Made by a program: the position numbers and the translations under genes
The notes under the pieces: model-generated
Told to the model about the DNA's origin: nothing
Database searches by the model: none
What the model saw: only the letters and a program-made list of their open reading frames with translations
Shown here: in pieces, positions 25 to 63,825 of the stretch
Numbering within the stretch: position 1 is the stretch's first letter
How the letters are laid out: each line of letters begins with the position of its first letter
Virus record (IMG/VR): IMGVR_UViG_3300035698_029839
Location: 186,001-250,000 of that record
DNA: 64,000 nucleotides
Direction: 5' to 3' (one strand)

Positions 25-312
25 GTGGAAGAGTTAAAAAATATAGATTGGGAGGTAGTAGAAAAAGAAAGATTCGAAGAAGTAAAATTTAATGAAAGTC
101 TCTTTGCGAAAATGGATAATATTAAAGTAGAGAGAGACGGAATAAAAGAAGAAAATAAGAAAGTTAAAGTAGAAAATAAGAAAGTTAAAGTAGAAAATAT
201 TCTTATTCATGAGCAAAATTTAGATTTGCTTAAAACTATTAAAGATTTAAAAAGTCATTCTGATCGTTTTAAATTACTGGATCTCGGAATAGAATTGGAT
301 TACGATGAATAA
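25..312 (+). CDS. hypothetical protein, coiled-coil-like, C-terminal RFxLLDL motif
   Basis: ORF track; internal 21-bp tandem repeat encoding ENKKVKV twice; stop overlaps the next start. Confidence 0.6.
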   Translation: MEELKNIDWEVVEKERFEEVKFNESLFAKMDNIKVERDGIKEENKKVKVENKKVKVENILIHEQNLDLLKTIKDLKSHSDRFKLLDLGIELDYDE

Positions 313-1300
313 AATTGTATGTGGAAATGCTTTAGATGAATTAAAAAAGTTAGAAGATGAAAGTATTGATCTTATCATTACTTCTCCTCCCTATTGGGGA
401 CAAAGAAATTATTCGGAACATTCAGATGAGATAGGAAATGAAAAATATGTTTTTGAGTATTTAGATAATCTAGAAATTGTTTTTGCTGAATGTTTAAGAG
501 TGTGTAAAATAACAGGTAGTATTATTTTTAATATTGGAGACAAATACATAAAAGGAGATCTTCATCTTATACCATATCGTTTTGCAATCAGGATGAAAGA
601 GAAATATCACCCTCCTCTAAAACTTATAAATGAGATTACATGGGTTAAGACTAATCCAACTCCCAGACAATATGATAAAAGATTAATTAGTGCTACAGAG
701 CCATTTTTTCATTTTGTTAAAAATAAAGATTACTATTATAATAGGACTGCTTTTTTAGATTATAATCAACCTATTAAAGCTAATACTTCTCCTAAAAAGG
801 GTGAGAAATATAGAAAAATGATATATGATTCTAATTTGACTATAAAAGAAAAATTTAATGCTTTATTAAGTCTTCAAAAGACTCAACGGGAGCTTCTTCA
901 GGGCAAAATAGCAGATTTTCGTATGAAGATACGAGGTATCCATAAGAAAGCCTTTGGAGGGCAATCTGGGGGTCGTAACAGCCAAATAGACAAGCAAGGA
1001 TATACTATAATTAGGATGTATGGAAAGAAGTTAAAAAGAGATGTTATAGAGAATTCTGTGGCAAATACAAAAAATATTGATCATCCAGCGGTTTTTCCCT
1101 TGAAAGTGATTACGGAATTGGTTAAACTACTTTCTAAAGAGAATAGTGTCGTTTTAGATCCTTTTTGCGGTAGTGGACAGGTATGTTTGGCTGCTAAGTC
1201 TTTAAATAGAAGATATTTAGGTATAGATTTAAATAAAAAATACTGTGAATTAGCCATAAAAAGATTACTTGGCATAAATAAGGTAGAAAGTGTATTATGA
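305..1300 (+). CDS. DNA N4-cytosine/N6-adenine methyltransferase (beta class)
   Basis: Catalytic TSPPY near the N-terminus, HPAVFP, and SAM-binding DPFCGSG near the C-terminus. Confidence 0.93.
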   Translation: MNKIVCGNALDELKKLEDESIDLIITSPPYWGQRNYSEHSDEIGNEKYVFEYLDNLEIVFAECLRVCKITGSIIFNIGDKYIKGDLHLIPYRFAIRMKEKYHPPLKLINEITWVKTNPTPRQYDKRLISATEPFFHFVKNKDYYYNRTAFLDYNQPIKANTSPKKGEKYRKMIYDSNLTIKEKFNALLSLQKTQRELLQGKIADFRMKIRGIHKKAFGGQSGGRNSQIDKQGYTIIRMYGKKLKRDVIENSVANTKNIDHPAVFPLKVITELVKLLSKENSVVLDPFCGSGQVCLAAKSLNRRYLGIDLNKKYCELAIKRLLGINKVESVL

Positions 1301-6101: not shown

Positions 6102-6956
6102 ATGACAACTAATATATATTTACAAAGTGATTTTCAAGAATCTTATGATAAGTATCTTCATGATCCTATGGGTAAAATCAGATGGAAAAGACTTTCTCGC
6201 GGAGGAAGAAATAGAAGAGAGATATTTAAATTATTAGAAAATTATGTAGGTGCTGTGGGAGGAAGGATAGATCATGTGGTTCCTCATGGAATAGTAAGGG
6301 ATTTATATGATAGGTATCGAGATGAAAGGATAATAGATGGTAAGGTTGAACGGAATTATAGATGGAAAGAACTTGGACTTCAACATTGTTTTAGAGATTT
6401 GGTTATTTATATAGATGAAATGGCACATAGGGGAGAAGGGAAAATAGCAGAAAATGTAGAAGGGGCACTTATTGAATATCCCGATCATTATGCTTCTGTT
6501 TTACTATCTGATAATAGAAATATTTATCCAACTTCAATATCTTATAGAGATTTGTATATCGGAGATCAAATATTTAGATTAAAATATCAATCTCTTACTG
6601 ATGGATGGAGATCTAATTGTGGGTATGTTAATATAATTTATGAAAATAGATCTCATTTATATGAGAATCAATTTACTCCTGCTTTTACAAAAAAAGAAGG
6701 GATACATATAATATCTCCTATTTTTGCTTTTGATTATATCGAAGTGAATGTAGAAAGAAGTCAATATCCTGATGGTATTCCAGAAAGATTTTATGTAGAT
6801 TTTAATGAAGCTCCTGGAATACCTGAAGAAGTAGTAGTTTGTAAACTTGGTCATGAGAGATACGGAGAGTTAATTTCATTCTATGATCTTATTTCAGAAA
6901 AAGAAATTTCCGAAATAATAGAAAAAACTTTGAAAAGTGAAAAGATATTGTTATAA
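6102..6956 (+). CDS. divergent ATP-grasp (RimK-like) protein
   Basis: HRGEGK, WRSN, FAFDY and DFNEAPG in RimK-like order. Confidence 0.45.
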   Translation: MTTNIYLQSDFQESYDKYLHDPMGKIRWKRLSRGGRNRREIFKLLENYVGAVGGRIDHVVPHGIVRDLYDRYRDERIIDGKVERNYRWKELGLQHCFRDLVIYIDEMAHRGEGKIAENVEGALIEYPDHYASVLLSDNRNIYPTSISYRDLYIGDQIFRLKYQSLTDGWRSNCGYVNIIYENRSHLYENQFTPAFTKKEGIHIISPIFAFDYIEVNVERSQYPDGIPERFYVDFNEAPGIPEEVVVCKLGHERYGELISFYDLISEKEISEIIEKTLKSEKILL

Positions 6957-21696: not shown

Positions 21697-22449
21697 ATGA
21701 AAAATATAGTGATAGCTTTTGTTGCGATAGTATCAATAGTGCTTTTTGTGGTACTCATAAATAATGATTCTCATGTCGATGTTTTTGCGGCTGAAAAAGA
21801 AACAAATAAACAAGTTTCTCAAGATACCGTCAATACAGAAATAGTCCTCACTAAGATCGAAGACACTTATACTATTTCTGAAGAAAGTTTAAATGACCCT
21901 ATAGAGCTAACTATCACTTTGGTCGATAAAACTTCTCCTAAAGTAGATAAAAGCATTCCTTCAAAGGTAGCTGTTTATTTAAAAGATGAAGTTGTTGAAT
22001 TAAAAATTGGAACTGGTCTTAAAGAAGTAGATCAGTCATGGGGCGAGCCCAGATCAGTCGAAAGAAAATATAAAGATGGTTACACAGAAATAATATGGAG
22101 ATATGGTGATTATTGGTCAAGAAAATCTAAGCTTAAAGGTAAGTATTATTATAAATTCGCAATATTTAAAGATGGTAAATTAGATTGGTACCGAAAAGAT
22201 GCAGATGTAAAAGTAAAGACACATAATCGTAATTCTGCGGTTCTAGACTATTTAGATGAAGGCCCTGTACCAACAAAAGGAATGAGTAAAAAAGATATAT
22301 ATAAAATATGGGGTCTTCCATATGGTATAGCATTAACCTGTTTTAATAATAAAACTGTTAAAGAGAGATGGATGTTTAGAATAGATGGTAAGTTATCTCA
22401 TTACTGTGAGTTAGAAAATAATAAACTAGTAGCTTGGGATGATTATTAA
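21697..22449 (+). CDS. secreted or membrane-anchored protein with two SmpA/OmlA-like repeats
   Basis: Signal peptide; IGTGLKEVDQSWGEP...W and KGMSKKDIYKIWGLP...W repeats. Confidence 0.45.
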   Translation: MKNIVIAFVAIVSIVLFVVLINNDSHVDVFAAEKETNKQVSQDTVNTEIVLTKIEDTYTISEESLNDPIELTITLVDKTSPKVDKSIPSKVAVYLKDEVVELKIGTGLKEVDQSWGEPRSVERKYKDGYTEIIWRYGDYWSRKSKLKGKYYYKFAIFKDGKLDWYRKDADVKVKTHNRNSAVLDYLDEGPVPTKGMSKKDIYKIWGLPYGIALTCFNNKTVKERWMFRIDGKLSHYCELENNKLVAWDDY

Positions 22450-22519
22450 TAATTTGAAAAGTGATTACATTCTCTTTATTCTAATATTATCTATAGAAAT
22501 GGACTATATATTAGAAAAA
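22447..22519 (+). repeat. 73-bp direct repeat, left of Type III R-M genes
   Basis: 68/73 identical to 26526-26598 by manual alignment. Confidence 0.9.
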
Positions 22520-22536: not shown

Positions 22537-24300
22537 ATGTTTAAAAATGATTACTCTGTATTAAATAAAAAAGATTTAATAGAAAAAGTGACAAAACAAG
22601 CTGCAAAATTAGATGAACAAGATAAAAAATTAGATGAACAGTCTAAAAGATATGGATTATTATGGGAAGATAAGCCAGAGAAAGTTGTAGAACAGTGTAG
22701 AAAAAATGTTCCGTTTTTAGTGGAGCAAAAAGAAAAATCAATAAAAAGAATTGGAGACAAACCTACTCACATCTTAATAGAAGGTGAAAACTATTATTCT
22801 TTATCTGTCCTGAGTTTTACTCATAAAAATAAAATAGATATCATATATATAGATCCTCCCTACAATAATGGAAAAGACAAGTGGAAATATAATAACAATA
22901 TAGTTGATATTAAAGATTCTTATAGGCATAGCAAATGGTTATCCCTTATGAGTAAAAGACTTATTTTAGCTAAAGATCTGCTAAAAGAAGATGGAGTTTT
23001 AATATGCACAATAGATCGTCATGAATCTAATAGATTGGGTTTATTATTAGAGAAAATATTTCCTAATAAAAAAATTGTATGTGTGACTATTGTTCACAAT
23101 CCAAGAGGAACGCAAGGCAATAATTTTTCTCATACTAATGAATATGCTTATTTTGTTTATCCTAGTGATGAAAAAAGATACATACAACAAAAATTACGCA
23201 ATGAATCATCTATAGAACCTCTAAGAAGATGGGGAGGGGAATCGGAAAGAAGATATGGAAAAAATGTTTTTTATCCTTTTATTATAAAAGATTTAGAGAT
23301 AGTTGATATTGGAGAAATTCCAGACGAAGACTTTCATCCTAAAAGCTCAACAATTATTAGAGATGATGGTTTGATTGAAGTATGGCCTATTGATAAAAAT
23401 GGAATAGAAAGAAAATGGAGATATTCGGCAGACAGTGTTAAAGAAGTGATAGAAGATATTCAAGTTATAAAACAAAAAAATAGCATTGAAATTAAAATTG
23501 CCATAAGAAAAGGAAACTATAAAACAGTATGGGTAGATAAAAAATATGATGCAAGTCAACATGGGACACAATTGCTAGGAAAGATTATTGATAAAAAATT
23601 TCCTTATCCCAAATCTATTTACGCTGTAAAAGACTGCTTAAAAGCTTGTGTCCACGACAAAAAGAATGCTATTATTCTTGATTTTTTTGCTGGGTCAGCA
23701 ACAACCGCTCATGCTGTTTTAGAGTTAAATAAAGACGATGAAGGGCAACGACAATTTATTATAGGGACTAGTGAAGAAGGAGATATTTGTAGAGATATAG
23801 CTATACCTAGAATACAAAAAGTGATAAATGGATATGATGTTATTACTAAAAAATATGATTATGGACTTGATGATCTGTGTTATTCTGAAGAAAAAAATGT
23901 AGAAAAAGTTTCTGCGACTGGTGATGGGTTAAAATGTTTTAAAATAGATTTCATGGAAGGAGAAAAAATCATAGATGATATTTTAGTAGAATTTTCTCCT
24001 CATGCTGTTGAGATTATTTGTGTTAAAGAAAATTGTTTTGATGAAGTCGTGGATACTAATGAATTTAAAATTTTTAAAAATATAAATGATAAATATATTG
24101 GAATAATTTGCGAGCACAATTTAGATTATGTTAAATCTTTTGTGGAACAGGTTAAAAAAATTGATAAGAAATTTATAATTTATGTTTTTTCTTATAATTC
24201 ACATATTAGTAATGAAGGATTTGAAGAAGTAGAAAATTTAGTAGAATTACGCTCGTTCCCTTATTTTATTTTGAATATCAATGAAAGGATTCATGAATAA
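22537..24300 (+). CDS. mod: Type III restriction-modification methyltransferase (Mod)
   Basis: YGLLWE, LIEGEN, IYIDPPYN, HSKWLS, FPYPKS, DFFAGSATT. Confidence 0.9.
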   Translation: MFKNDYSVLNKKDLIEKVTKQAAKLDEQDKKLDEQSKRYGLLWEDKPEKVVEQCRKNVPFLVEQKEKSIKRIGDKPTHILIEGENYYSLSVLSFTHKNKIDIIYIDPPYNNGKDKWKYNNNIVDIKDSYRHSKWLSLMSKRLILAKDLLKEDGVLICTIDRHESNRLGLLLEKIFPNKKIVCVTIVHNPRGTQGNNFSHTNEYAYFVYPSDEKRYIQQKLRNESSIEPLRRWGGESERRYGKNVFYPFIIKDLEIVDIGEIPDEDFHPKSSTIIRDDGLIEVWPIDKNGIERKWRYSADSVKEVIEDIQVIKQKNSIEIKIAIRKGNYKTVWVDKKYDASQHGTQLLGKIIDKKFPYPKSIYAVKDCLKACVHDKKNAIILDFFAGSATTAHAVLELNKDDEGQRQFIIGTSEEGDICRDIAIPRIQKVINGYDVITKKYDYGLDDLCYSEEKNVEKVSATGDGLKCFKIDFMEGEKIIDDILVEFSPHAVEIICVKENCFDEVVDTNEFKIFKNINDKYIGIICEHNLDYVKSFVEQVKKIDKKFIIYVFSYNSHISNEGFEEVENLVELRSFPYFILNINERIHE

Positions 24301-26528
24301 TGAATTTAAAAAAATACCAAAGAAAAGCTACAAATAAAATAGTAGAAGATTTATTGGAATGGTTGGGTGAAGAGCATAATAGAGATCCTAGAAGGTTGCT
24401 TTTCAAAGGGCCTACTGCTTGTGGTAAAACATTGACGATGTTTCACTCTATGGCAGAAACTAAAAAAGAATATGAAAATGTTGTGTTTTTATACATATGT
24501 TTTAATTCTTTACCAGAACAAACTAAGAAAGAATTTGAAAATTATGCTGAGAATAATGGATCTTTAAAATGTCAAATGATTGATTCTGAAGCTCATAATA
24601 ATCTGAAACCAGGTGAAATAGGAATTATAAAGTGGCAAAAAACTAATAAGAAAAATAACAGATTAATGATTGATGGAGAAACAAAATCTAATTTAAAGAA
24701 TATTATTAAAAACATAAGAAAAAAAGGGTGTAAGGTTATATTATATATTGATGAACCTCAGCATACGGCAGGAACGGAGAATTCTCAGAATACAATAAAC
24801 ATTATTAATCCTGATATAATAATGTATATTTCTGCCACTCCAGATATGAGTATTTCTTATGATGATGAAGCTATAATAAATGAAAAAGATGTAAAAAATG
24901 CACAAATGATAAGAAAGAAAATAATCACAAATGAAAGAATAAAGTATATAAGTGGGATTGATGATTCTATATTTATAAATGCATCACTTGACAAACGAAA
25001 AAGTCTTAAGCGTGATTTCCGAAGTCTAAATTTAGATTTCAATCCTTTATTACTTATTCAACTTCCTAATTTATCAGACAAATATTATGATATAGTTTAC
25101 GAAAGAACAATAAAATCGTTAAAAGATCAAGGAATAACCTTTAAGAATGGTAAGCTTGCAATTAATATAAGTGAGGATAAGCGTAATGTTGAGTTTATCA
25201 GAGAAAATAATAGTAAAGTTGATGTATTATTATTTAAGGAGGGTCTTATATATGGTTGGAATTGTCCTAGAGCTTATTTATGTTTAATGCTTAGGGGTAT
25301 TTCTGACAATCTCATAGTTAGGACTCAACTTGAAGGTAGAATTATACGAACATTAGGACAAAAATATTATCCTATAGAATCATTAAATTATGGATATATA
25401 TATCATAACTCATTATCATTGGAAATAGAAAGTGATAATGGAGATTTATATTATAATAAGAGTGCTTGTAGAAGTAAGGATGCTCCCACAAACATACAAT
25501 TGCCTTCTAGCTCTACAGTGCAATACTCTAAATATTATAAAATAGAAAGTAATTATAAAAAGTTTTTTAATAAAGCAGCAACAACAAATAAATTAAAAAA
25601 TAATATTTCTTTAAAAGTTAAAGATTTTATGGGAAAAATAGGAACTGATGGTGAGATAAATAATTTTGATAAAACTGGAAGTGTCGAAGAGAAGATTGTT
25701 TACAAACCAATTCTTGATGAAAGGCAGTTGCAAATAATATTTGAAAAATATATTTTAGAAAAAATAAAAGTATTTCAAGAGCCTTGTGTCGGATTAAATA
25801 TGTTAAAAGATACTCTTCGTAATTATTTTGTATCTCAGCTTAATCTTTCTACAAATGGTATTTTTGTAAAAATGCAAAAGATTATATTGTCAGATAAAGA
25901 TAACAAAGCACTCTTTGACAGTGTGCTTAATGAATCAATAGAAAACTATAAAAAACATTGGCAGAAACAATGCAGAAAATCTAAAGAAAAGTTTTTTAAA
26001 ATTCCGTCTGAGCTTCATTATAGGTTGAATTCTTTTAAAAAAACGGGACATAAATTAATAAAGTCTTCTAAGTCTTATATGCAACCTTTTTATATGTTAG
26101 AGCCGACAGGTCCAGAATTACTTTTTTTAGATTGGATTCATGAAAATCCCAATGTCAAAGGATTTTATAAAAATGGGACAAAAGATAAAGAGGGCATACA
26201 TTTTGGAATAACTTATGATAAGAGCGATGGGACTTTAGGATTATTTCATCCTGACTGGCTAGTTTTTTATGTTAATGGATCTATTGGAATTTATGATACT
26301 AAAGAAGGGCGCACCGCCTCAGAAGATGATGCAGGACCAAAAGCAAAATGTCTTTATAATTATATACTAAAAGTTTCGACTATCGACAGATTATTACATG
26401 GCGGCATTGTGACATTTGAAAAAGGAAGTTGTTATATTAATAGCTTAGAAAATTATAGCTATGATCGTAATAATTTATTAAGCACTGGATGGGAAATTTT
26501 TTCTGGTAATTTCATGTTGATTTACTAA
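24300..26528 (+). CDS. res: Type III restriction endonuclease subunit (Res)
   Basis: LKKYQ, GPTACGKT, DEPQH, SATP, GWNCPRA, QLEGRIIR; C-terminal FHPDW...YDTKEG nuclease; coupled to mod. Confidence 0.87.
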   Translation: MNLKKYQRKATNKIVEDLLEWLGEEHNRDPRRLLFKGPTACGKTLTMFHSMAETKKEYENVVFLYICFNSLPEQTKKEFENYAENNGSLKCQMIDSEAHNNLKPGEIGIIKWQKTNKKNNRLMIDGETKSNLKNIIKNIRKKGCKVILYIDEPQHTAGTENSQNTINIINPDIIMYISATPDMSISYDDEAIINEKDVKNAQMIRKKIITNERIKYISGIDDSIFINASLDKRKSLKRDFRSLNLDFNPLLLIQLPNLSDKYYDIVYERTIKSLKDQGITFKNGKLAINISEDKRNVEFIRENNSKVDVLLFKEGLIYGWNCPRAYLCLMLRGISDNLIVRTQLEGRIIRTLGQKYYPIESLNYGYIYHNSLSLEIESDNGDLYYNKSACRSKDAPTNIQLPSSSTVQYSKYYKIESNYKKFFNKAATTNKLKNNISLKVKDFMGKIGTDGEINNFDKTGSVEEKIVYKPILDERQLQIIFEKYILEKIKVFQEPCVGLNMLKDTLRNYFVSQLNLSTNGIFVKMQKIILSDKDNKALFDSVLNESIENYKKHWQKQCRKSKEKFFKIPSELHYRLNSFKKTGHKLIKSSKSYMQPFYMLEPTGPELLFLDWIHENPNVKGFYKNGTKDKEGIHFGITYDKSDGTLGLFHPDWLVFYVNGSIGIYDTKEGRTASEDDAGPKAKCLYNYILKVSTIDRLLHGGIVTFEKGSCYINSLENYSYDRNNLLSTGWEIFSGNFMLIY

Positions 26529-26598
26529 TAATTTGAAAAGTGATTGAATTCTCTTTATTCTAATGTTATCTATAGAAATGTACGATATATTAGAAAAA
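26526..26598 (+). repeat. 73-bp direct repeat, right of Type III R-M genes
   Basis: Partner of 22447-22519. Confidence 0.9.
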
Positions 26599-26606
26599 GG
26601 AGATAT

Positions 26607-26855
26607 ATGAGAATACAAGATTTTGGTGAAAGCTCTTTTAAATGTAAATTATTGGCAGGTAAGGCAGAAGATGTTTTACAGGATATGCCAGAGAATATCT
26701 TCCACATGGCCGTTACAAGCCCTCCATACTGGGATCAGAGACAATATCTATTCAGTGGGGCAGTCGTACTTAACAACAATTTGAGTGAGAGTGAAAAGGA
26801 AAAAATAGAAAAAGAGTTGGAAGAGTATGGAATCAAGCCAAAAATACAAGAATAA
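26607..26855 (+). CDS. N-terminal part of split DNA methyltransferase
   Basis: AAGGAG RBS, ATG 26607; AVTSPPYWDQRQY catalytic motif. Confidence 0.85.
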   Translation: MRIQDFGESSFKCKLLAGKAEDVLQDMPENIFHMAVTSPPYWDQRQYLFSGAVVLNNNLSESEKEKIEKELEEYGIKPKIQE

Positions 26856-27441
26856 AGATTGGTTATATGACCATTATATAGTTAAAAAATTATCAACTTA
26901 TCAAATTGGGGAGTTAGTAAGCAGGGATAGCAAAACTATATATAATCACTTAAAAAAGTTTAACATACCTACAAGAACTAGAGGAGAAAATCTTTCTAAA
27001 AAAGGCAATGATAATTACATGAAACATTGTGAGAAAAATCCTTTTGAAGGTAAAAATCATTCTGAGAAAACGAAGGAAATTTTAAGAATAAAAAGTTCCA
27101 GATCGAGACCAGATCTAAGGGGCAAGAAAAACGGGATGTACGGGAAGAAAGGAAAACTCAATCCGAATTATAAGGATGGCTCTTCTAGGGAAAGACAACT
27201 GATTTACGCTAGCTCAAGATGGAAAAAAATAGTTAGAAGGACTTTTAAAAGAGACAATTATTTATGTCGGAGATGTAGCGGCCGTAGTGAATATAAAAAT
27301 CCGCTACATTCTCATCACCTGAGATCATGGGCTAACAATTTAAAAAGCAGATTCGATATTAATAATTTGGTTACGCTATGCAAGAAATGTCATAATTTTG
27401 TTCATAGTAAAAAAAATATAAATAAGGATTTTATAATATGA
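26827..27441 (+). mobile_element. HNH homing endonuclease inserted in the MTase gene
   Basis: NUMOD3-like HSEKTKE and NPNYKDG; RDNYLCRRC...HSHH...NLVTLCKKCH. Confidence 0.9.
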
Positions 27442-28406
27442 AGATATGGGATATCAAAGAAATACCAGAACACTTAAAAAAACATTTTACTGCACCAGAG
27501 TTAGGACAAGAATCGACACCAGAAGAATATGTAGAAAATTTAGTTGCTATATGCAAAGAGGTAAAAAGAGTTCTGAGGAAAGATGGAACTTTCTGGCTTA
27601 ACATAGGAGATGGGTATTGTAAGAAGGCAGTTAAATCTCTAGGAATTAAACCTAAAGATATGGTTGGAATTCCTTGGATGCTTGCGTTCGCCATGAGAAA
27701 AGATGGATGGTATTTGAGAAGCGATATCATATGGCAGAAAACAAATCCTATGCCCGAAAGCACTAAGTCTAGGCCGTCCAAATCATATGAACATTTATTT
27801 CTCTTTTCTAAATCTGATAAATATTTTTATGATTATTTTGCTATTGCTGAACCTCAAAAAGAAATTTCTATTAAACGAGCATATTCTAAAAATAAAGTGA
27901 ACAAAAGAAAAGATGCTAATAGTAATGAGTATGCTATTAGCGGAAAGTCTCAAGATAAAACTTATAAAAAGTTGATAAAAACAATAGAAGAACTTGGGCC
28001 AGGAGAACTTCTTATGTGCAATAAGAAGGACGTTTGGACATTAGCAACTGCCAATACTAAGATAAAACATTTTGCTGTTTATCCTATGGAATTAATTAAA
28101 CCATGTATTTTTGCAGGTAGTTCTTTGAAGGGTTGTTGCCCAAAATGTCAAGCTCCATGGGTTAGAGAAGATAGGAAAAAATGGGTACCAAGTTGCGATT
28201 GTGGAGAAACAGAGGCAAAAGAATGTCTTGTTTTAGATCCTTTTAATGGATCTGGAACTACTGGAATCGTGTGCAGAGAATCTCATAGAAAATATGTAGG
28301 AATAGATATTAGTGAAAAATATCTTTCATATACAAGAAGTGAATTAATAGGATCTAAAATGGATGTAGAAGAGGTAGATACTGTTGAAGAAATTATTAAA
28401 TTATAG
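27438..28406 (+). CDS. C-terminal part of split DNA methyltransferase
   Basis: LGQESTPEEYV, RVLRKDGTFWLNIGD, HFAVYP, DPFNGSGTTG; lacks the SPPY motif, which is in 26607-26855. Confidence 0.9.
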   Translation: MKIWDIKEIPEHLKKHFTAPELGQESTPEEYVENLVAICKEVKRVLRKDGTFWLNIGDGYCKKAVKSLGIKPKDMVGIPWMLAFAMRKDGWYLRSDIIWQKTNPMPESTKSRPSKSYEHLFLFSKSDKYFYDYFAIAEPQKEISIKRAYSKNKVNKRKDANSNEYAISGKSQDKTYKKLIKTIEELGPGELLMCNKKDVWTLATANTKIKHFAVYPMELIKPCIFAGSSLKGCCPKCQAPWVREDRKKWVPSCDCGETEAKECLVLDPFNGSGTTGIVCRESHRKYVGIDISEKYLSYTRSELIGSKMDVEEVDTVEEIIKL

Positions 28407-28423
28407 AAAAATATTATTTTTTA

Positions 28424-28452
28424 CTTGACAAAAGTGAAAAAAGTAGTATAAT
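28424..28452 (+). promoter_or_regulatory. sigma70-type promoter; 29-bp perfect direct repeat (left copy)
   Basis: CTTGACAAAAGTGAAAAAAGTAGTATAAT, identical at 35512-35540. Confidence 0.85.
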
Positions 28453-28555
28453 GTGTTATAAATCAGTTGAATAAGTTTATTAGCCGACATTTCAATTTTC
28501 CTGATTTTATTGAAATGTCAGAAATCGCTCCTAAAGAGCAGAAAAGGAGTTTCCT

Positions 28556-29251
28556 ATGGATTCTCAAAAACGTATCCCCATCAAACGAGCAATCGAACTA
28601 GCAAAAATCATTTCTGAACAGTATAACATAAAAAGTTATAAAGATTGGAAAAACTTTATCAAAAGAGATTCTGATTCTACAGATGTTCCTGGGCCAGGAA
28701 AGACTTTTTTATCATTTAAAGCAGCAAAAAAGTTTGTTAAGTCTCTTAATTTAAAATCTATGCAAGAGTGGAGAGTATATTGTGATGAAAATCATATTGT
28801 AAATGTTCCTTCTCATCCTGCAAAACAGTATAAAAATGAATGGATATCTTGGAGTGATTTTCTAAAAGGAGATCACGAAGTCCCTTCTAAATTTCTACCA
28901 TTTAAAGAAGCTAGAAAGATAGTAAGAAGTCTGCATTTAGAGAGCTGCAAAGAATGGGACGAATATTGCAAGTCGGGGAAAAAGCCAAAAAATATCCCAC
29001 ATAGTCCTCAACATATCTACAAAGAAAATGGATGGCTGGGCTGGGATTGTTTTTTTGGCACAGGAGTTTATAAAGATATGGATGATGAAGAAATACTATT
29101 TGATATTAAGTCAGAATTATGCTATGTCGGGGAGACAATGGAAGCGTTAAGAGGAGATATGACAGATGAAGAGATTTTAATAGCTTATGAGCAACAAGCT
29201 GTAGAGGTTATTGAGGCTATTAAAGAATACATGAAAAAATATCCAAGATAA
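28556..29251 (+). CDS. integrase-repeat (INT_rpt-like) protein
   Basis: Two full and one partial FLxFxxAxxxV...EW...IPxxP..YK..W..W.DF repeats; acidic C-terminal tail. Confidence 0.8.
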   Translation: MDSQKRIPIKRAIELAKIISEQYNIKSYKDWKNFIKRDSDSTDVPGPGKTFLSFKAAKKFVKSLNLKSMQEWRVYCDENHIVNVPSHPAKQYKNEWISWSDFLKGDHEVPSKFLPFKEARKIVRSLHLESCKEWDEYCKSGKKPKNIPHSPQHIYKENGWLGWDCFFGTGVYKDMDDEEILFDIKSELCYVGETMEALRGDMTDEEILIAYEQQAVEVIEAIKEYMKKYPR

Positions 29252-60008: not shown

Positions 60009-60081
60009 TGTCCTTTAGTGTAATGGCTTAGCACGATTGCCTTTGACGCAATCAGTCGAAGTTCGAATCTTCGGAGGACAG
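60009..60081 (+). tRNA. tRNA-Gln(UUG)
   Basis: Cloverleaf; anticodon loop CT-TTG-AC; T loop TTCGAAT. Confidence 0.9.
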
Positions 60082-60178
60082 CTATGAATAGGATAATGTA
60101 TAAAAATAAAAAAAGGAGTATTCCCCTATTATCAGAATATATATAATATAAAGTACATTTTAATAATAGGAGATTGTA

Positions 60179-60892
60179 ATGAAACAAAAAACAGGGCCTA
60201 AAAGGACTAGTATTATATGGCAGATGTCAAAAAAAGATTTTACAGAAAATGTGAAAAAAAGTTCTACTTTTAAAGAGATATTAAAATATTTTGGATTAGA
60301 AAATAAAGGTAGCAATTACAAAACATTAAAAAAAAGATTAGAGGAAGAAAATATAAATTATTCTCATATTCCTACAGGAGTAGGATGTAACAAAGGAATG
60401 AAAATAAATAGAAAAGCTATCTCATTAGAAAAAGTAATGATAGAAAATTCTACTTATTGCAGGGGGACTCTTAAAAAAAGATTATTAAAGAATGGTATGT
60501 TAGAAAATAAATGTATGATCTGTGATCAACTACCTGAACATAATGGGATTAAATTAGTAATGGTTTTAGATCATATTAATGGAACTCCTAATGATCATAG
60601 ATTAGAAAATTTAAGATTACTTTGTCCTAATTGCAATAGCCAACAATCAACTTTTGCTGGAAAAAGGCATAAAAAACATTATTATTGTGAAAAATGTGGG
60701 AATAAAAGAAAAAATAAACAAAGTAAATATTGTTTTAGTTGTTCTGTTAAATTAAATGGGCAAAATAGAAGAAAAGTTAAAAATAGACCATCTAAAGAAA
60801 AATTATTAAAAGAAATAAAAGAAACTAATTATTGTGCTGTTGGTAGAAAATATGATGTAAGTGATAGTGCTATTAGAAAATGGTTGAAATGA
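60179..60892 (+). CDS. HNH endonuclease in tRNA array (paralog 1)
   Basis: CMIC...LDHING..NDHRLENLRLLCPNCNSQ; C-terminal HTH. Confidence 0.9.
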   Translation: MKQKTGPKRTSIIWQMSKKDFTENVKKSSTFKEILKYFGLENKGSNYKTLKKRLEEENINYSHIPTGVGCNKGMKINRKAISLEKVMIENSTYCRGTLKKRLLKNGMLENKCMICDQLPEHNGIKLVMVLDHINGTPNDHRLENLRLLCPNCNSQQSTFAGKRHKKHYYCEKCGNKRKNKQSKYCFSCSVKLNGQNRRKVKNRPSKEKLLKEIKETNYCAVGRKYDVSDSAIRKWLK

Positions 60893-60895
60893 TAT

Positions 60896-60969
60896 TCCCA
60901 TGTAACTCAATTAGGCAGAGTGGCACGCTGTTAACGTGTTGGTTGTAGGTTCGATTCCTACCGTGGGAG
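60896..60969 (+). tRNA. tRNA-Asn(GUU)
   Basis: Cloverleaf; loop CT-GTT-AA. Confidence 0.9.
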
Positions 60970-61081
60970 TTCGATTCTTTGAAAAGTAAATAGGGGTTCC
61001 AAAAGGAACACACATTGTGTTAAGTTTTAATTACTAACACATGGAGAGGTATAGCACTGAGTGGTATCTCTCCATGTTTTC

Positions 61082-61155
61082 TGACCTATAGCTTATGTGG
61101 GAAAAGCATTCGTCTTATAAGCGAAAGAGTCCAGGTTCGAATCCTGGTGGGTCAA
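61082..61155 (+). tRNA. tRNA-Ile(UAU)
   Basis: Cloverleaf; loop CT-TAT-AA; A73. Confidence 0.88.
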
Positions 61156-61158
61156 TAT

Positions 61159-61231
61159 AGGCATAAAGCTCAGCAGGCAGAGCATCGTGCTGATATCACG
61201 AAGGCCGTTGGTTCGAATCCAGCTATGCCTA
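61159..61231 (+). tRNA. tRNA-Ile(GAU)
   Basis: Cloverleaf; loop CT-GAT-AT. Confidence 0.9.
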
Positions 61232-61299
61232 TTAGAAAGAGGAATTCTTCTTTTTTTCCCGAAATAATATAGAATAAAGGACAAAAGGGAGAATTCATC

Positions 61300-61518
61300 A
61301 TGAAAGAAGTCTTGATAGAATTAGTAAAAAGGGTAAGTAGGAAAGCAGTTATATTAGCAATAGCTATGGTGTTGGTATATATGGTTATTATAACACCGAA
61401 TGCCGTAAATGCAGTGATAGCTATAGGGGTGATTTCTGGTTTATCAATAGTAGGAGCAGGACTTCAATTTTATTTAGATCTTAAAAAGATCAAAGATGAC
61501 GAAACAGATAAAATTTAA
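61300..61518 (+). CDS. small two-helix membrane protein (holin-like)
   Basis: SRK followed by two hydrophobic segments and a charged tail. Confidence 0.5.
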   Translation: MKEVLIELVKRVSRKAVILAIAMVLVYMVIITPNAVNAVIAIGVISGLSIVGAGLQFYLDLKKIKDDETDKI

Positions 61519-61659
61519 GCAGGTTGAATGTGAGTAAGTTATCGCTTATGGAGCCTGATGTGGATGGTTCGATTCCTCCTCTCTCGATTACAAATTGTTC
61601 GAGAGATAGCTTAACGGTAGAGCGCAGTAAAAACACTTATTCCTCCCACATATCTGCTT
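61517..61659 (+). ncRNA. YrlA-like Y RNA with permuted tRNA-like domain (Y1)
   Basis: Terminal stem AAGCAGGT/ATCTGCTT; T arm GGATGGTTCGATTCCTCC, then closed acceptor-like stem TCTCTCGA/TCGAGAGA, then D arm AGCTTAACGGTAGAGC; Ro60 gene in the same window. Confidence 0.8.
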
Positions 61660-61669
61660 TTTTAAACTT

Positions 61670-61763
61670 AGAAATATGGTGATAGGGCCTACAAAGCTTG
61701 GGTCAGCCAACTACCCTAGGGACGCAAGTCATTGGTCTGGGGTCGAGTCCCAGTCATATTTCT
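61670..61763 (+). ncRNA. aberrant tRNA-like RNA without a canonical anticodon loop
   Basis: Acceptor-like AGAAATATGG/TCATATTTCT, T arm CTGGG-GTCGAGT-CCCAG, enlarged branched anticodon arm. Confidence 0.5.
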
Positions 61764-61770
61764 CTTTTTT

Positions 61771-61844
61771 ACCCGCTTCGCTTAGTTGGCTAAAGCATCT
61801 GTCCTACAAACAGAAGATCGTAGGTTCGAGTCCTATCGCGGGTA
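61771..61844 (+). tRNA. tRNA-Val(UAC)
   Basis: Cloverleaf; loop CC-TAC-AA (C33). Confidence 0.85.
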
Positions 61845-61846
61845 TT

Positions 61847-61970
61847 ACACAGGTTGATCGCATGAAGGTTATCGGATAAAACATTTTTTCTTCAAACAAA
61901 AAATGCAAGTAGGGTTCAAACCCTTACAACCCAGAAATGGGAAAATTCTTCTGCACTAACATATCTGTGT
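61847..61970 (+). ncRNA. Y-RNA-like ncRNA (Y2)
   Basis: ACACAGGTTGA...GGTTATCG at 5' end and ACATATCTGTGT at 3' end; internal hairpin plus T-arm-like GTAGGG-TTCAAAC-CCTTAC. Confidence 0.7.
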
Positions 61971-61973
61971 TTT

Positions 61974-62044
61974 CCCCTATTGGTGTAATGGGAGCACGTG
62001 GCACTGTCGATGCCAGGGCAGCAGATCGAAACTGCTATGGGGGG
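61974..62044 (+). tRNA. tRNA-Asp(GUC)
   Basis: Cloverleaf; loop CT-GTC-GA; G73; T loop ATCGAAA. Confidence 0.85.
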
Positions 62045-62049
62045 TTTTT

Positions 62050-62131
62050 GAGAGTATTGAGCAATTGGTGGCTTATCTGGCTGTAACCCAGATTCTGAAA
62101 AGACTTGTAGGTTCGAATCCTTCTGCTCTCA
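62050..62131 (+). tRNA. tRNA-Tyr(GUA)
   Basis: Cloverleaf with long variable arm; loop CT-GTA-AC. Confidence 0.9.
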
Positions 62132-62134
62132 TTT

Positions 62135-62251
62135 GGAGTTACTATGAATAAGAATTCTAGAAACTTATTTTAGTACTTTAGTCGTCTAAGGGCAAGGATA
62201 CCTGTGCAAGCAGGAGATATGGTGTTCGAGTCGTCATCTAAATATTACTCC
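62135..62251 (+). ncRNA. degenerate tRNA-like element in a larger closing stem
   Basis: GGAGT/ACTCC closure; D-arm-like GTCTAAGGGCAAGGAT, short CCTG-TGCAAG-CAGG arm, TTCGAGT T loop. Confidence 0.45.
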
Positions 62252-62256
62252 TAAAT

Positions 62257-62347
62257 GGTAAGTTGGCAGAGTCTGGCTTATTGCACTTGGTTGCTAACCA
62301 AGAGGGCCTTGAATAAGGTCCCATAGGTTCAAATCCTATACTTACCG
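62257..62347 (+). tRNA. tRNA-Ser(GCU)
   Basis: Cloverleaf with long variable arm; loop TT-GCT-AA; G73. Confidence 0.92.
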
Positions 62348-62429
62348 TTAGTGTGGAAAGCCGCACACGTAGTTACTTCCTTTTCGAAGGAGCAGACTAG
62401 GCTTGACGAAGGGGAAGAGACTCCTAACT

Positions 62430-62516
62430 GGATGAGCAAGCAGATTGGTGACTGCACTGGTTTTGAAAACCAACGAGCCTTTAAAAGCCTTGAGAGTTCG
62501 ATTCCCTCCTCATCCG
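62430..62516 (+). tRNA. tRNA-Ser(UGA)
   Basis: Long variable arm; loop TT-TGA-AA; G73. Confidence 0.88.
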
Positions 62517-62522
62517 CTTATT

Positions 62523-62595
62523 AGCGATATGGTGAAAATGGTAATCATAGATCCTTCATAAGGATCAGTTCCTGGTTCGATTCCAGATATCGCTA
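62523..62595 (+). tRNA. tRNA-Met or Ile2 (CAU)
   Basis: Cloverleaf; loop TT-CAT-AA; no initiator GGG/CCC stem. Confidence 0.85.
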
Positions 62596-62603
62596 TTTAT
62601 CAA

Positions 62604-62679
62604 CTGAACGTGGGGAAGTTTGGCCTAACCCGCCTGGTCTGGAGCCAGGAGAACGCTGGTTCAAATCCAGCCGTTCAGA
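62604..62679 (+). tRNA. tRNA-Pro(UGG)
   Basis: C1-G72, A73; stem CCTGG/CCAGG; loop TC-TGG-AG (C33, A37). Confidence 0.82.
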
Positions 62680-62787
62680 TTTTGTAACACCGAATAGAAA
62701 ATAAGCAGTCAAGACATATGTTTTATTAAAGGAATCCTGTCTTTTATGTCGAATATATAGATATAAGTTATTTAGATAGGAGATAAA

Positions 62788-63477
62788 ATGAGAAAAAGAA
62801 CAAGTGTTGTGTGGAAGATATCAATAGAAGAATTAAAAAAGATAGTAAAAAAGAATGATAGTTTTGCAAAAATTTTAAAACATTTTGGGATGGCAATAGC
62901 AAGTGGAAACTATAAAACATTAAAAAAAAGATTAAATTATGAAAATATAAGTTATTCTCATATATCTCAAGGGCTTAATAATAATAAAGGAAGAAAATTT
63001 CCAGAAAGAGCTATTCCCTTAAAAGAAGTAATGGTAAAAAACTCTACCTATTGTAGGGGAACTCTTAAAAAAAGATTATTAAAAAAGGGTTTATTAGAAA
63101 ATAAATGTAATATTTGTGGACAAATTTCTGAACATAATAATATTAAGTTAATAATGGTTTTAGATCATATAAATGGAGTTTCTAATGATCATCGCGTAGA
63201 GAATTTAAGATTGCTTTGTCCTAATTGTAATAGCCAACAAAAAACATTTGCGGGAAGAAATTCTGTAAGAAAAAAATATAACTGTATTACTTGTGGTAAA
63301 AAAATTACAAAACATTCAAAATTGTGTAAAAGTTGCAGTGCTAGATTGCAAAAAAGAAAAGTTAAAAATAGACCTTCAGTAGAACAATTATTAAAAGAAA
63401 TAAAAGAAACTAATTATTGTGTTGTTGGTAGGAAATATGAAGTAAGTGATAATGCAGTAAGAAAATGGTTAAAATAA
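62788..63477 (+). CDS. HNH endonuclease in tRNA array (paralog 2)
   Basis: Close paralog of 60179-60892 (NSTYCRGTLKKRLLK, LENLRLLCPNCNSQQ-like, LLKEIKETNYC). Confidence 0.9.
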   Translation: MRKRTSVVWKISIEELKKIVKKNDSFAKILKHFGMAIASGNYKTLKKRLNYENISYSHISQGLNNNKGRKFPERAIPLKEVMVKNSTYCRGTLKKRLLKKGLLENKCNICGQISEHNNIKLIMVLDHINGVSNDHRVENLRLLCPNCNSQQKTFAGRNSVRKKYNCITCGKKITKHSKLCKSCSARLQKRKVKNRPSVEQLLKEIKETNYCVVGRKYEVSDNAVRKWLK

Positions 63478-63479
63478 AA

Positions 63480-63551
63480 GGCCCATTCTTCTAGTGGCTA
63501 GGATATCAGGGTTTCATCCTGAAAACAGCGGTCCGACTCCGCTATGGGCTA
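63480..63551 (+). tRNA. tRNA-Glu(UUC)
   Basis: Cloverleaf; loop GT-TTC-AT; T loop TCCGACT. Confidence 0.85.
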
Positions 63552-63559
63552 TTTAATCA

Positions 63560-63597
63560 AGGCAGAAACTGAGGGTTCGAGTCCCTTCCAGAGTATT
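63560..63597 (+). pseudogene. orphan tRNA 3' half
   Basis: GAGGG-TTCGAGT-CCCTT T arm with no matching 5' half. Confidence 0.5.
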
Positions 63598-63600
63598 CCT

Positions 63601-63672
63601 GCTCTTCTGGTGTAACGGTTAGCATCCGTGATTCTCAGTCACGAGATAGGGGTCCGACTCCCCTGAAGAGTA
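63601..63672 (+). tRNA. tRNA-Glu(CUC)
   Basis: Cloverleaf; loop TT-CTC-AG; T loop TCCGACT. Confidence 0.85.
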
Positions 63673-63825
63673 TTTTTCCTCTTATAAGTCCTTGTCTTTT
63701 ATGGATTTAAAAAAATATTAAAAAAATTGGAAAAAAGTTATTGAAAAGTGAAAGAAAATCCGATATAGTAATATCATCATAACGAAAGTTATGACTTCTT
63801 TTACAAGTTAATAGAGAGAAAAAAG

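What the first reader, a model, noticed from the sequence alone, without database searches (positions are those of the whole stretch)
26607..28406. DNA methyltransferase split into two ORFs by an intron-less HNH gene
Seen: the TSPPY motif is in an 82-aa ORF with its own RBS and stop. The rest of the enzyme is in a separate ORF starting at 27438. The HNH gene overlaps both (29 nt and 4 nt), leaving no room for intron core structure, and there are no intein motifs. The break falls in an inserted loop between SPPY and LGQE. Established precedent: phage Aeh1 nrdA is split by mobE and reassembles after translation. Inference: a two-chain MTase whose catalytic and SAM-binding motifs are on different polypeptides.
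Basis: partly seen in the sequence, partly recalled or inferred. Interest (0 to 1): 0.6.

Follow-up and report, generated by a model that had tools for sequence, protein, structure and literature searches.

The report
Endonuclease cassette splits phage DNA methyltransferase
A selfish HNH endonuclease gene has cut a phage DNA methyltransferase gene into two separately translated pieces, and it sits between two short conserved peptide-coding arms, found in many other split methyltransferases, that probably help the two pieces reassemble without RNA or protein splicing.

Summary
An 82-aa ORF (26607-26855) carries motif IV (TSPPY). A 204-aa HNH gene (26827-27441) overlaps it by 29 nt. A 322-aa ORF (27438-28406, PF01555) overlaps the HNH gene by 4 nt.

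A related phage has the uninterrupted gene. It shows that the insert is exactly 26760-27497 (738 nt), with no host codon lost or duplicated. I found no intron signal and no intein features.

It is a 31-aa tail on the N-fragment and a 20-aa head on the C-fragment, and both arrived with the cassette.

The same tail and head recur in methyltransferases only 30-46% identical to this one. They occur at three different insertion sites and flank different HNH genes in either orientation. About 90 protein clusters (50% identity) end in this tail, against two contiguous tail-head forms. Codon changes in tail and head are mostly synonymous.

A complex prediction rebuilds the fold from the two chains and places tail against head (score 0.87, best control 0.00).

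Most likely this is a two-chain methyltransferase assembled with cassette-borne adaptor peptides. That would be a conserved, portable version of the single known Aeh1 NrdA/mobE case. Expression and activity are untested.

The parts
26528..26606 (+). Conserved upstream leader with a promoter-like site and the Shine-Dalgarno sequence (AAGGAG, 26597-26602) of the N-fragment
   Evidence: The same ~70-nt element lies upstream of the 587-aa methyltransferase gene (22449-22519) and of the unsplit gene in L113. A promoter-like site lies at 26533-26561.
26607..26759 (+). Native part of the N-fragment (codons 1-51), with catalytic motif IV TSPPY at 26715-26729
   Evidence: It is colinear with L113 5983-6153 and with unsplit relatives P0002-P0041.
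26760..27497 (+). Inserted cassette of 738 nt: tail-coding arm, HNH gene, head-coding arm
   Evidence: The empty-site comparison with L113 shows that positions 6153 and 6154 are adjacent there. Window and L013 are about 99% identical from 26736 to 27491 but unrelated upstream of 26640.
26760..26855 (+). 31-aa C-terminal tail of the N-fragment plus its stop codon (26853-26855)
   Evidence: The tail is absent from unsplit relatives. It is conserved in other split loci. Window versus L018 gives dN 0.13 and dS 1.09; window versus L014 differs at codon positions 4/3/18. The tail profile finds almost only short N-fragments in 1.84 billion representative proteins.
26827..27441 (+). HNH homing-endonuclease gene (204 aa); HNH/zinc motif at residues 147-194 (27265-27408); weak N-terminal HTH and NUMOD3-like matches
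   Evidence: Pfam PF01844 1.3e-8; PHROG 8446 4e-22; PDB 5h0m 2.8e-6. The Cys4, His and Asn columns are invariant in alignment A4.
27424..27428 (+). AAGGA Shine-Dalgarno sequence for the C-fragment, inside the conserved last codons of the HNH gene; the HNH stop overlaps the C-fragment start (ATGA, 27438-27441)
   Evidence: Read from the sequence. The same stop/start overlap is seen in L014 and L019, and in free-standing relatives upstream of full-length methyltransferase genes.
27438..27497 (+). 20-aa N-terminal head of the C-fragment (motif IWDI..IPxHLKKxF)
   Evidence: Window versus L014: the head is 92% identical while the native methyltransferase part is 46%. Codon-position differences are 1/0/7, with dN 0.023. 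The head is present in all split loci examined.
27498..28406 (+). Native part of the C-fragment (302 codons plus stop): the remaining methyltransferase motifs, a Cys-rich insert and SAM-binding motif I at 28236-28262
   Evidence: It is colinear with L113 6154-7014, 74% identical at the amino-acid level. PF01555 match. The closest solved chains by sequence are beta-class methyltransferases.

Best explanation
A 738-bp mobile cassette has inserted cleanly after codon 51 of a beta-class (PF01555, N4-cytosine or N6-adenine) DNA methyltransferase gene. The host is a large (at least 298 kb), ~31% GC phage from salt-lake metagenomes. The cassette is a free-standing HNH homing-endonuclease gene flanked by two short coding arms. 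Nothing is spliced. The 5' arm extends the upstream fragment by 31 residues and supplies its stop codon. The end of the HNH gene supplies a ribosome-binding site. The 3' arm supplies a start codon and 20 residues for the downstream fragment. The enzyme is therefore made as two chains. The 82-aa chain carries catalytic motif IV. The 322-aa chain carries the rest of the fold and SAM-binding motif I. The two chains reassemble by fold complementation: the N-fragment strand slots between two strands of the C-fragment sheet. The tail and head pack against each other as a small strand/helix unit that stabilises the assembly, which makes the insertion nearly neutral for the phage. The HNH enzyme presumably cuts uninterrupted methyltransferase alleles near the motif IV coding sequence. 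Repair then copies the whole cassette, arms included, into them. Shown here: the anatomy, the clean insertion, the recent transfer of the cassette, protein-level selection on the arms, and their confinement to split genes. Inferred: separate translation, reassembly, enzyme activity, the adaptor role of the arms and the cleavage target.
For: (1) L113, a partly syntenic related phage, has an uninterrupted 355-aa gene. Window 26589-26759 matches L113 5983-6153 and window 27498-28358 matches L113 6154-7014. (2) No splicing signal was found. Rfam at E up to 10 finds no intron in 26000-29000. The flanks show no excess RNA structure (z -1.2 and -0.7). There are 30 in-frame stops between the fragments. 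The two fragments are in different frames in L019, L031, L041 and L111. (3) The same tail | endonuclease gene | head layout occurs in methyltransferases 46%, 44% and 30% identical to this one, and both fragment ORFs are intact each time. (4) The arms are under purifying selection as protein (and the codon listing). (5) Window and L013 share a ~99% identical cassette (26736-27491) but have different N-terminal methyltransferase sequence and different neighbours. (6) A profile of TSPPY plus tail, run against 1.84 billion representative proteins, gives 97 hits. About 90 are 60-240-aa N-fragments ending in the tail; only two hits are contiguous tail-head forms. The ESM Atlas lists 30 clusters of similar short viral proteins. 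(7) complex prediction on the two chains scored 0.87, 0.87 and 0.86, with a best control of 0.00. That mark was reached by 51 of 78 solved complexes and 2 of 108 mismatched pairs. The runs agree in at least 79% of contacts, and the partner's pLDDT is at least 73. Tail residues 51-82 touch head residues 1-25, and N-fragment residues 32-37 lie against C-fragment residues 45-53 and 263-267. [quoted passage not shown]
Against: There are no expression, splicing or activity data, because no RNA run holds this sequence. The complex score may only reflect the model's memory of the single-chain methyltransferase fold. The genome has at least three other PF01555 genes, including an unsplit paralog, so loss of this enzyme might be tolerated. 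Contiguous tail-head forms exist (P0244, P0216). The endonuclease gene between the arms differs in type and orientation among loci. The arms could therefore predate the HNH gene rather than travel with it. In the Aeh1 case the tails were not needed for the two halves to bind each other (PMC3045599), so 'adaptor' may be too simple a description.
Confidence: 0.7

Rival explanations
1. The tail-head unit is an older, small in-frame insertion domain of some methyltransferases. Various HNH genes later used its coding sequence as a landing site. On this view the split is tolerated because the unit is a surface hairpin, and the arms are not cargo of the endonuclease gene. The enzyme would still be a two-chain methyltransferase.
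For: There are contiguous forms without an endonuclease gene: P0244 (454 aa, site B, locus L107) and P0216 (site A). Three different endonuclease genes lie between the same arms, and the window's own HNH family occurs in both orientations.
Against: The empty allele L113 and all close unsplit relatives lack the unit entirely. Contiguous forms are 2 against about 90 split clusters. Window and L013 share tail, HNH gene and head as one ~99% identical block. The contiguous forms are equally well explained by later loss of the endonuclease gene.
Confidence: 0.2
2. The methyltransferase is dead. The two ORFs are remnants, and the conserved arms serve the endonuclease (its expression, regulation or target recognition) rather than the methyltransferase.
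For: The genome carries several other methyltransferase genes, one of them an unsplit paralog. No activity data exist.
Against: A 322-codon frame stays open in a 31% GC genome, and both fragments are intact in every diverged lineage examined. All near-invariant family residues seen in alignment A1 are retained. A start codon and Shine-Dalgarno sequence sit at the head in each locus. The arms are conserved even where the HNH gene is on the opposite strand, which argues against a role in HNH translation.
Confidence: 0.1
3. The insert is removed after transcription or translation, by a group I or group II intron, an intein or split intein, or by ribosomal bypass, so that a single-chain enzyme results.
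For: Many HNH-interrupted phage genes are splicing group I introns (PMC7344957). [quoted passage not shown] In this window the two fragments happen to share a frame.
Against: Rfam finds no intron. Only 67 nt and 56 nt of the insert lie outside the HNH ORF, and these stretches show no excess structure. Their conservation has a three-base period, so it is protein-coding conservation. The base before the 5' junction is G, whereas my recollection is that group I introns have U there. Tail plus head total 51 aa, far short of a Hint domain. There is no Cys, Ser or Thr at the first insert residue, no His-Asn before the downstream junction, and the residue after that junction is Glu. The fragments are in different frames in four of seven loci.
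Confidence: 0.03

Closest known systems
Aeromonas phage Aeh1 nrdA-a / mobE / nrdA-b (Crona et al. 2011, PMC3045599)
   Same: A free-standing HNH gene lies inside an enzyme gene, with no RNA or protein splicing. Active-site residues are split between two chains. A C-terminal tail and an N-terminal head are absent from unsplit homologs and came with the insertion. The endonuclease gene overlaps the downstream fragment.
   Different: The host gene is a DNA methyltransferase, not a ribonucleotide reductase. The Aeh1 tails are a unique pair, and the authors expected such tails to be undetectable by similarity. Here the same tail/head pair recurs in about 90 clusters, at three sites, with different endonuclease genes. 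The tail/head function is untested here.
[quoted passage not shown] 2009, PMC2677866)
   Same: The gene order is the same: N-part with extension, endonuclease gene, extension with C-part. They occur mostly in phage metagenomes, and gene control elements come in with the endonuclease gene.
   Different: The arms here total 51 aa and lack every intein block and every catalytic residue, so no trans-splicing is expected. Assembly would be non-covalent.
Phage T4 gene 39 / mobA / gene 60 topoisomerase split (discussed in PMC3045599; bypass cassette in bioRxiv 10.1101/2022.08.31.505936)
   Same: An HNH-family mob gene splits an enzyme gene into two translated parts with tail-like extensions. The mobile cassette carries extra sequence that neutralises its own insertion.
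   Different: The T4 cassette also carries a 50-nt ribosomal bypass element. Nothing of that kind is seen here.
Group I introns with HNH ORFs in phage genes (for example Pectobacterium phage CB7, PMC7344957)
   Same: An HNH gene interrupts a conserved phage gene at a catalytic motif.
   Different: There is no intron core here, and the flanks of the HNH ORF are translated and selected as protein.
Naturally two-subunit DNA methyltransferases such as M.AquI and M.EcoHK31I (my recollection, not checked here)
   Same: An active DNA methyltransferase assembled from two polypeptides.
   Different: As I recall, those are C5-cytosine enzymes with no endonuclease gene between the parts and no shared adaptor peptides.

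Membership tests
Beta-class N4/N6 DNA methyltransferase (Pfam PF01555) | Profile match above the curated cut-off | tested here: met
   The C-fragment scores 134.8 bits against a cut-off of 26.7. Solved chains that match the C-fragment by sequence are beta-class enzymes, including CcrM, M.RsrI, M.MboIIA and M.PvuII. The fold of the relative P0244 matches the same enzymes.
Beta-class N4/N6 DNA methyltransferase (Pfam PF01555) | Catalytic motif IV (D/S)PP(Y/F) and SAM-binding motif I FxGxG, in the order IV then I | tested here: met
   TSPPY lies at 26715-26729 in the N-fragment and DPFNGSGTT at 28236-28262 in the C-fragment.
Beta-class N4/N6 DNA methyltransferase (Pfam PF01555) | Methyl transfer to DNA | not testable with these tools
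   This needs co-expression of both ORFs and a methylation read-out.
HNH endonuclease (Pfam PF01844), homing type | HNH motif with zinc-binding cysteines, plus a DNA-binding module | tested here: met
   PF01844 scores 35.3 bits against a cut-off of 21.4. C147, C150, H163, H164, N180, C185, C188, H189 and H193 are invariant in A4. The NUMOD3 and HTH matches are weak.
HNH endonuclease (Pfam PF01844), homing type | Presence/absence polymorphism at one site, with transfer between alleles | tested here: met
   The site is empty in L113. A near-identical cassette sits in a different allele and context in L013.
HNH endonuclease (Pfam PF01844), homing type | Cleavage of the empty allele | not testable with these tools
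   This needs an in-vitro cleavage assay.
Group I intron | Conserved catalytic RNA core (P3-P9), U before the 5' splice site, G at the 3' end | tested here: not met
   Rfam gives no hit at E up to 10. The flanks have no excess structure. The base before the junction is G. Flank conservation has a three-base, protein-coding period.
Intein / split intein ('fractured gene') | Hint domain blocks; Cys/Ser/Thr at intein residue 1 and at the first C-extein residue; terminal His-Asn | tested here: not met
   Tail 31 aa plus head 20 aa. The first insert residue is Ala. The head ends in TAP, followed by Glu. None of these positions is conserved as required across loci.
Aeh1 NrdA-type split gene with element-derived tails | Free-standing endonuclease gene between two translated halves, with extensions absent from unsplit homologs | tested here: met
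Aeh1 NrdA-type split gene with element-derived tails | Tails required for activity of the reassembled enzyme | not testable with these tools
   Support is indirect only: purifying selection on the arms and a predicted tail-head contact.

The most novel reading that the evidence does not exclude
The tail/head pair is a portable, sequence-conserved split-protein adaptor. It travels with homing-endonuclease genes and lets them colonise permissive sites of enzyme genes at almost no cost. That would be a third kind of self-neutralising intervening element beside introns and inteins, acting by non-covalent protein complementation. It would be widespread in phages: about 90 clusters at 50% identity, three insertion sites, and genomes from low-GC (window ~31%) to visibly GC-rich (L041, L111, L112).
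Probability: 0.45. Interest if true: 0.85.

Novelty: new variant of a known kind. Interest (0 to 1): 0.7.

Why it matters
A gene split by a free-standing homing endonuclease and rescued by element-derived tails has been shown for one case, Aeh1 NrdA. Its authors suggested this might be a general mechanism, but they expected such tails to be too variable to find by similarity. Here a single recognisable tail/head pair recurs across many diverged methyltransferases, at several sites, with different endonuclease genes. That makes their idea testable on a family scale. It would explain how endonuclease genes can sit inside catalytic cores without introns or inteins. It may also provide a natural, compact (about 50 aa in total) heterodimerising tag for engineering split proteins. 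On the practical side, gene callers and annotators will often miss or mislabel these 60-100-aa N-fragments.

Tried and rejected
- **Rfam:** the scan at E up to 10 gave only chance snoRNA-like hits.
- **RNA folds:** folding the two non-HNH flanks showed nothing above shuffled controls.
- **Pfam on the tail-head unit (P0244:88-140):** no family. The N-fragment's weak DAHP_snth_FXD hit (E 0.034) was dismissed as chance.
- **The search for related loci with the HNH protein alone:** only distant hits.
- **Phage GenBank collection:** no close relative. The best methyltransferase matches are about 40% identical and unsplit.
- **RNA evidence:** no RNA run holds the stretch, so splicing could not be tested with reads.
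- **Read laying (3,801 letters, within the operators' 6,000 limit):** this gave contigs only. A joint at 26733->27723 in one X7 contig has a 23-letter side at 85% likeness. I take it for another organism's methyltransferase, not a cassette-free allele.
- **Shared frame of the two fragments:** I considered that it hints at read-through or an intein. I rejected this because of the 30 in-frame stops and because four of seven other loci use different frames.
- **Head 'IWDI...H..F' versus intein block F:** the resemblance was considered and dropped, because the spacing and the terminal residues do not fit.
- **Literature:** three full-text searches found no paper on an HNH-split N4/N6 methyltransferase.

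Full report
**1. The observation**

The window is G000:C1:186001-250000 of an IMG/VR virus record of 297,710 bp, estimated 62% complete. It is about 31% GC, all long ORFs lie on the + strand, and there are 13 tRNA genes. DNA contigs that match it come from salt-lake metagenomes.

- The N-fragment is 26607-26855 (82 aa). It has TSPPY at 26715-26729 and AAGGAG four bases before its ATG.
- The HNH ORF is 26827-27441 (204 aa; PF01844 1.3e-8, PHROG 8446 4e-22, PDB 5h0m 2.8e-6).
- The C-fragment is 27438-28406 (322 aa; PF01555 5.5e-39; motif I at 28236-28262).

The overlaps are 29 nt and 4 nt. Exact contigs from independent runs span both junctions.

**2. Where exactly the gene is broken**

The word search with the C-fragment found unsplit relatives of 349-365 aa at 60-75% identity. 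Aligned with both fragments, they run straight from 'SPPYWxQRDYxVxG' into 'QLGQExTPEEY'.

One of them, P0004, lies in a related large phage (L113) that shares partial synteny upstream. Window 26589-26759 matches L113 5983-6153, and window 27498-28358 matches L113 6154-7014. The insert is therefore 26760-27497, 738 nt, with no host codon lost or duplicated.

It follows that the last 31 residues of the N-fragment (the tail) and the first 20 of the C-fragment (the head) are not a native loop. They belong to the inserted DNA.

**3. Not an intron, not an intein**

- Rfam at E up to 10 finds no intron.
- Only 67 and 56 nt of the insert lie outside the HNH ORF, and they fold no better than shuffled sequence (z -1.2 and -0.7).
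- The frame shared by the two fragments has 30 stops between them.
- In four of seven comparable loci the two fragments are in different frames.
- Tail plus head total 51 aa. They lack the Cys/Ser/Thr and His-Asn positions of inteins, and no such residue is conserved across loci.

**4. The same layout elsewhere**

A search with the 82-aa N-fragment and a search with the HNH protein, followed by contig look-ups, gave these loci:
- L013: HNH 99% identical.
- L018: N-fragment 76% identical.
- L014-L017: HNH 69%, native methyltransferase part 46%.
- L019: HNH 54%, C-fragment 44%.
- L020-L022: HNH 51%, a different methyltransferase subfamily at 30%.

IMG/VR added L031 and L041.

Every one has an N-fragment ending in a tail of the form '..VVLxxxLxxxExxxIxxELxxxGIxP'. 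Every one has a C-fragment beginning with a head of the form 'IWDIxxIPxHLKKxF', with a start codon at or near the HNH stop.

Between window and L014 the head is 92% identical, the tail 71%, the HNH 69%, and the native methyltransferase only 46%.

**5. The arms are selected as protein**

The codon listings show many synonymous changes under conserved residues.

| Comparison | Result |
|---|---|
| Tail, window vs L018 | dN 0.13, dS 1.09 |
| Tail, window vs L014 | differences at codon positions 1/2/3 = 4/3/18 |
| Head, window vs L014 | differences 1/0/7; dN 0.023, dS saturated |
| HNH gene, window vs L014 | differences 45/29/95; dN 0.21, dS 2.0 |

A three-base period of this kind fits coding constraint, not RNA structure.

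**6. The cassette moves**

Window and L013 are about 99% identical from 26736 to the end of L013 (window 27491). That span covers the tail, the HNH gene and the head. Identity falls to about 85% over the TSPPY codons and to nothing upstream of 26640. The N-terminal 30 residues and the neighbouring genes differ. Together with the empty site in L113, this is the signature of recent homing with a short co-conversion tract.

More distant members of the HNH family (33-39% identity) are free-standing. They sit between a helicase gene and a full-length methyltransferase gene, often with the same stop/start overlap. The family as a whole is therefore tied to methyltransferase genes.

**7. How widespread, and is the tail ever part of an unsplit enzyme?**

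This claim rests on the absence of relatives, so I used the one exhaustive search on a profile of TSPPY plus tail (A2). Among 1.84 billion representative proteins, 97 score at E <= 0.001. Sorting them gave the following:
- 77 short N-fragments split just after motif IV (site A). A few of these are atypical.
- 10 split after 'GLEPTxDCG' (site B).
- 5 split after the 'IPxRFxIA' helix (site C).
- 6 others. Five of these are unrelated repeat proteins, and one is P0244.

All the site B and site C fragments end in the same tail.

P0244 is a 454-aa unsplit methyltransferase with tail and head joined directly at site B. P0216, counted among the site A hits, is a second contiguous case.

The ESM Atlas lists 30 clusters of similar 76-91-aa viral proteins.

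**8. The gene between the arms varies**

- L108 (site B) has an HNH gene of another type on the opposite strand.
- L109 (site C) has a different 170-aa ORF with HNH-like motifs.
- L111 and L112 (site A, high GC) have the window's own HNH family (46-48% identical) on the opposite strand.

Tail and head are conserved in all of them. This is the main reason to keep the rival reading open, in which the arms predate the endonuclease gene.

Against that rival: the empty allele has no arms, contiguous forms are rare, and the window/L013 block includes arms and HNH gene together.

**9. Reassembly**

Complex prediction on the two chains gave scores of 0.87, 0.87 and 0.86, with a best control of 0.00. 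That mark was reached by 51 of 78 solved complexes and 2 of 108 mismatched pairs. The runs agree in at least 79% of contacts, and the partner's pLDDT is at least 73.

N-fragment residues 32-37 lie between C-fragment residues 45-53 and 263-267, as one strand of the Rossmann-like sheet. Tail residues 51-82 touch head residues 1-25. The score may partly reflect memory of single-chain methyltransferases, so it supports binding but does not show it.

An AlphaFold2 model of P0244 (pLDDT 78.9) shows the joined unit as a short strand, a 14-residue helix and a short helix, at pLDDT 66-83. Its fold matches CcrM, M.RsrI, M.BceJIV, M.MboIIA and M.PvuII.

**10. Comparison with what is known**

The nearest precedent is Aeh1 nrdA-a/mobE/nrdA-b. 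There, tails that arose with the mobE insertion are essential for activity. The authors proposed that this may be general but expected such tails to escape similarity searches (PMC3045599).

[quoted passage not shown] Many HNH-interrupted phage genes are true introns (PMC7344957); this one is not.

Three full-text searches found no paper on an HNH-split N4/N6 methyltransferase.

**11. Verdict**

- **Novelty:** a new variant of a known kind. It is a conserved, recurrent tail/head pair in a new host enzyme family, found at three sites.
- **Confidence:** about 0.7 that the enzyme works as two chains, and about 0.45-0.5 that the arms act as assembly adaptors carried by the mobile element.
- **Untested:** expression, lack of splicing, activity and the cleavage target all remain to be tested at the bench.

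Noticed in passing
P0019, P0042; L031:2826-4208: Some relatives of this methyltransferase carry an in-frame insertion of about 170 aa with a LAGLIDADG-like motif. It lies between the 'ALR' helix and 'GWYLR', which is the same permissive site C used by the tail/head cassette. I saw no obvious intein splicing blocks. L031 has both this insertion and the HNH cassette.
   Followed up: partly
L003:1399-2547 (G000 173701-174849) and L003:31-870: The same phage genome holds an unsplit 382-aa paralog, 42% identical to the C-fragment, with an empty site A. Two genes upstream lies a 279-aa ORF with NUMOD3 and TnsA-like endonuclease matches, possibly another free-standing homing endonuclease.
   Followed up: partly
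window 22449-22519 and 26528-26598; L113:5922-5991: A conserved leader of about 70 nt, with a promoter-like site, is repeated upstream of the 587-aa methyltransferase gene and of the split gene. It is also present upstream of the unsplit gene in the related phage.
   Followed up: partly
window 28425-28452: A perfect sigma-70 consensus promoter (TTGACA, 16 nt, TATAAT) lies just downstream of the methyltransferase stop, probably starting the next transcription unit.
   Followed up: no
window 60009-63673: A cluster of 13 tRNA genes, all on the + strand, including two tRNA-Ile, two tRNA-Ser and two tRNA-Glu.
   Followed up: no
window 305-1300, 22537-24300, 24300-26528: The region is rich in DNA-modification genes: two further PF01555 methyltransferase genes and a 742-aa ResIII-type helicase gene directly upstream of the split gene.
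   Followed up: no
L029, L030, L032, L035, L037, L039, L040: Distant members of the same HNH family (33-39% identical) are free-standing between a helicase-like gene and a full-length methyltransferase gene of another subfamily, often with an overlapping stop and start. The family seems specialised on methyltransferase loci.
   Followed up: partly
P0236, P0198, P0240: Non-methyltransferase proteins contain tandem repeats of a tail-like motif ('LTxEExxxIxxELxELGI'). This could be chance resemblance of an amphipathic helix, or a hint that the tail derives from a more general module.
   Followed up: no
L013:57-644: The contig that carries the near-identical cassette has a second, unrelated HNH gene (195 aa) three genes upstream.
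   Followed up: no
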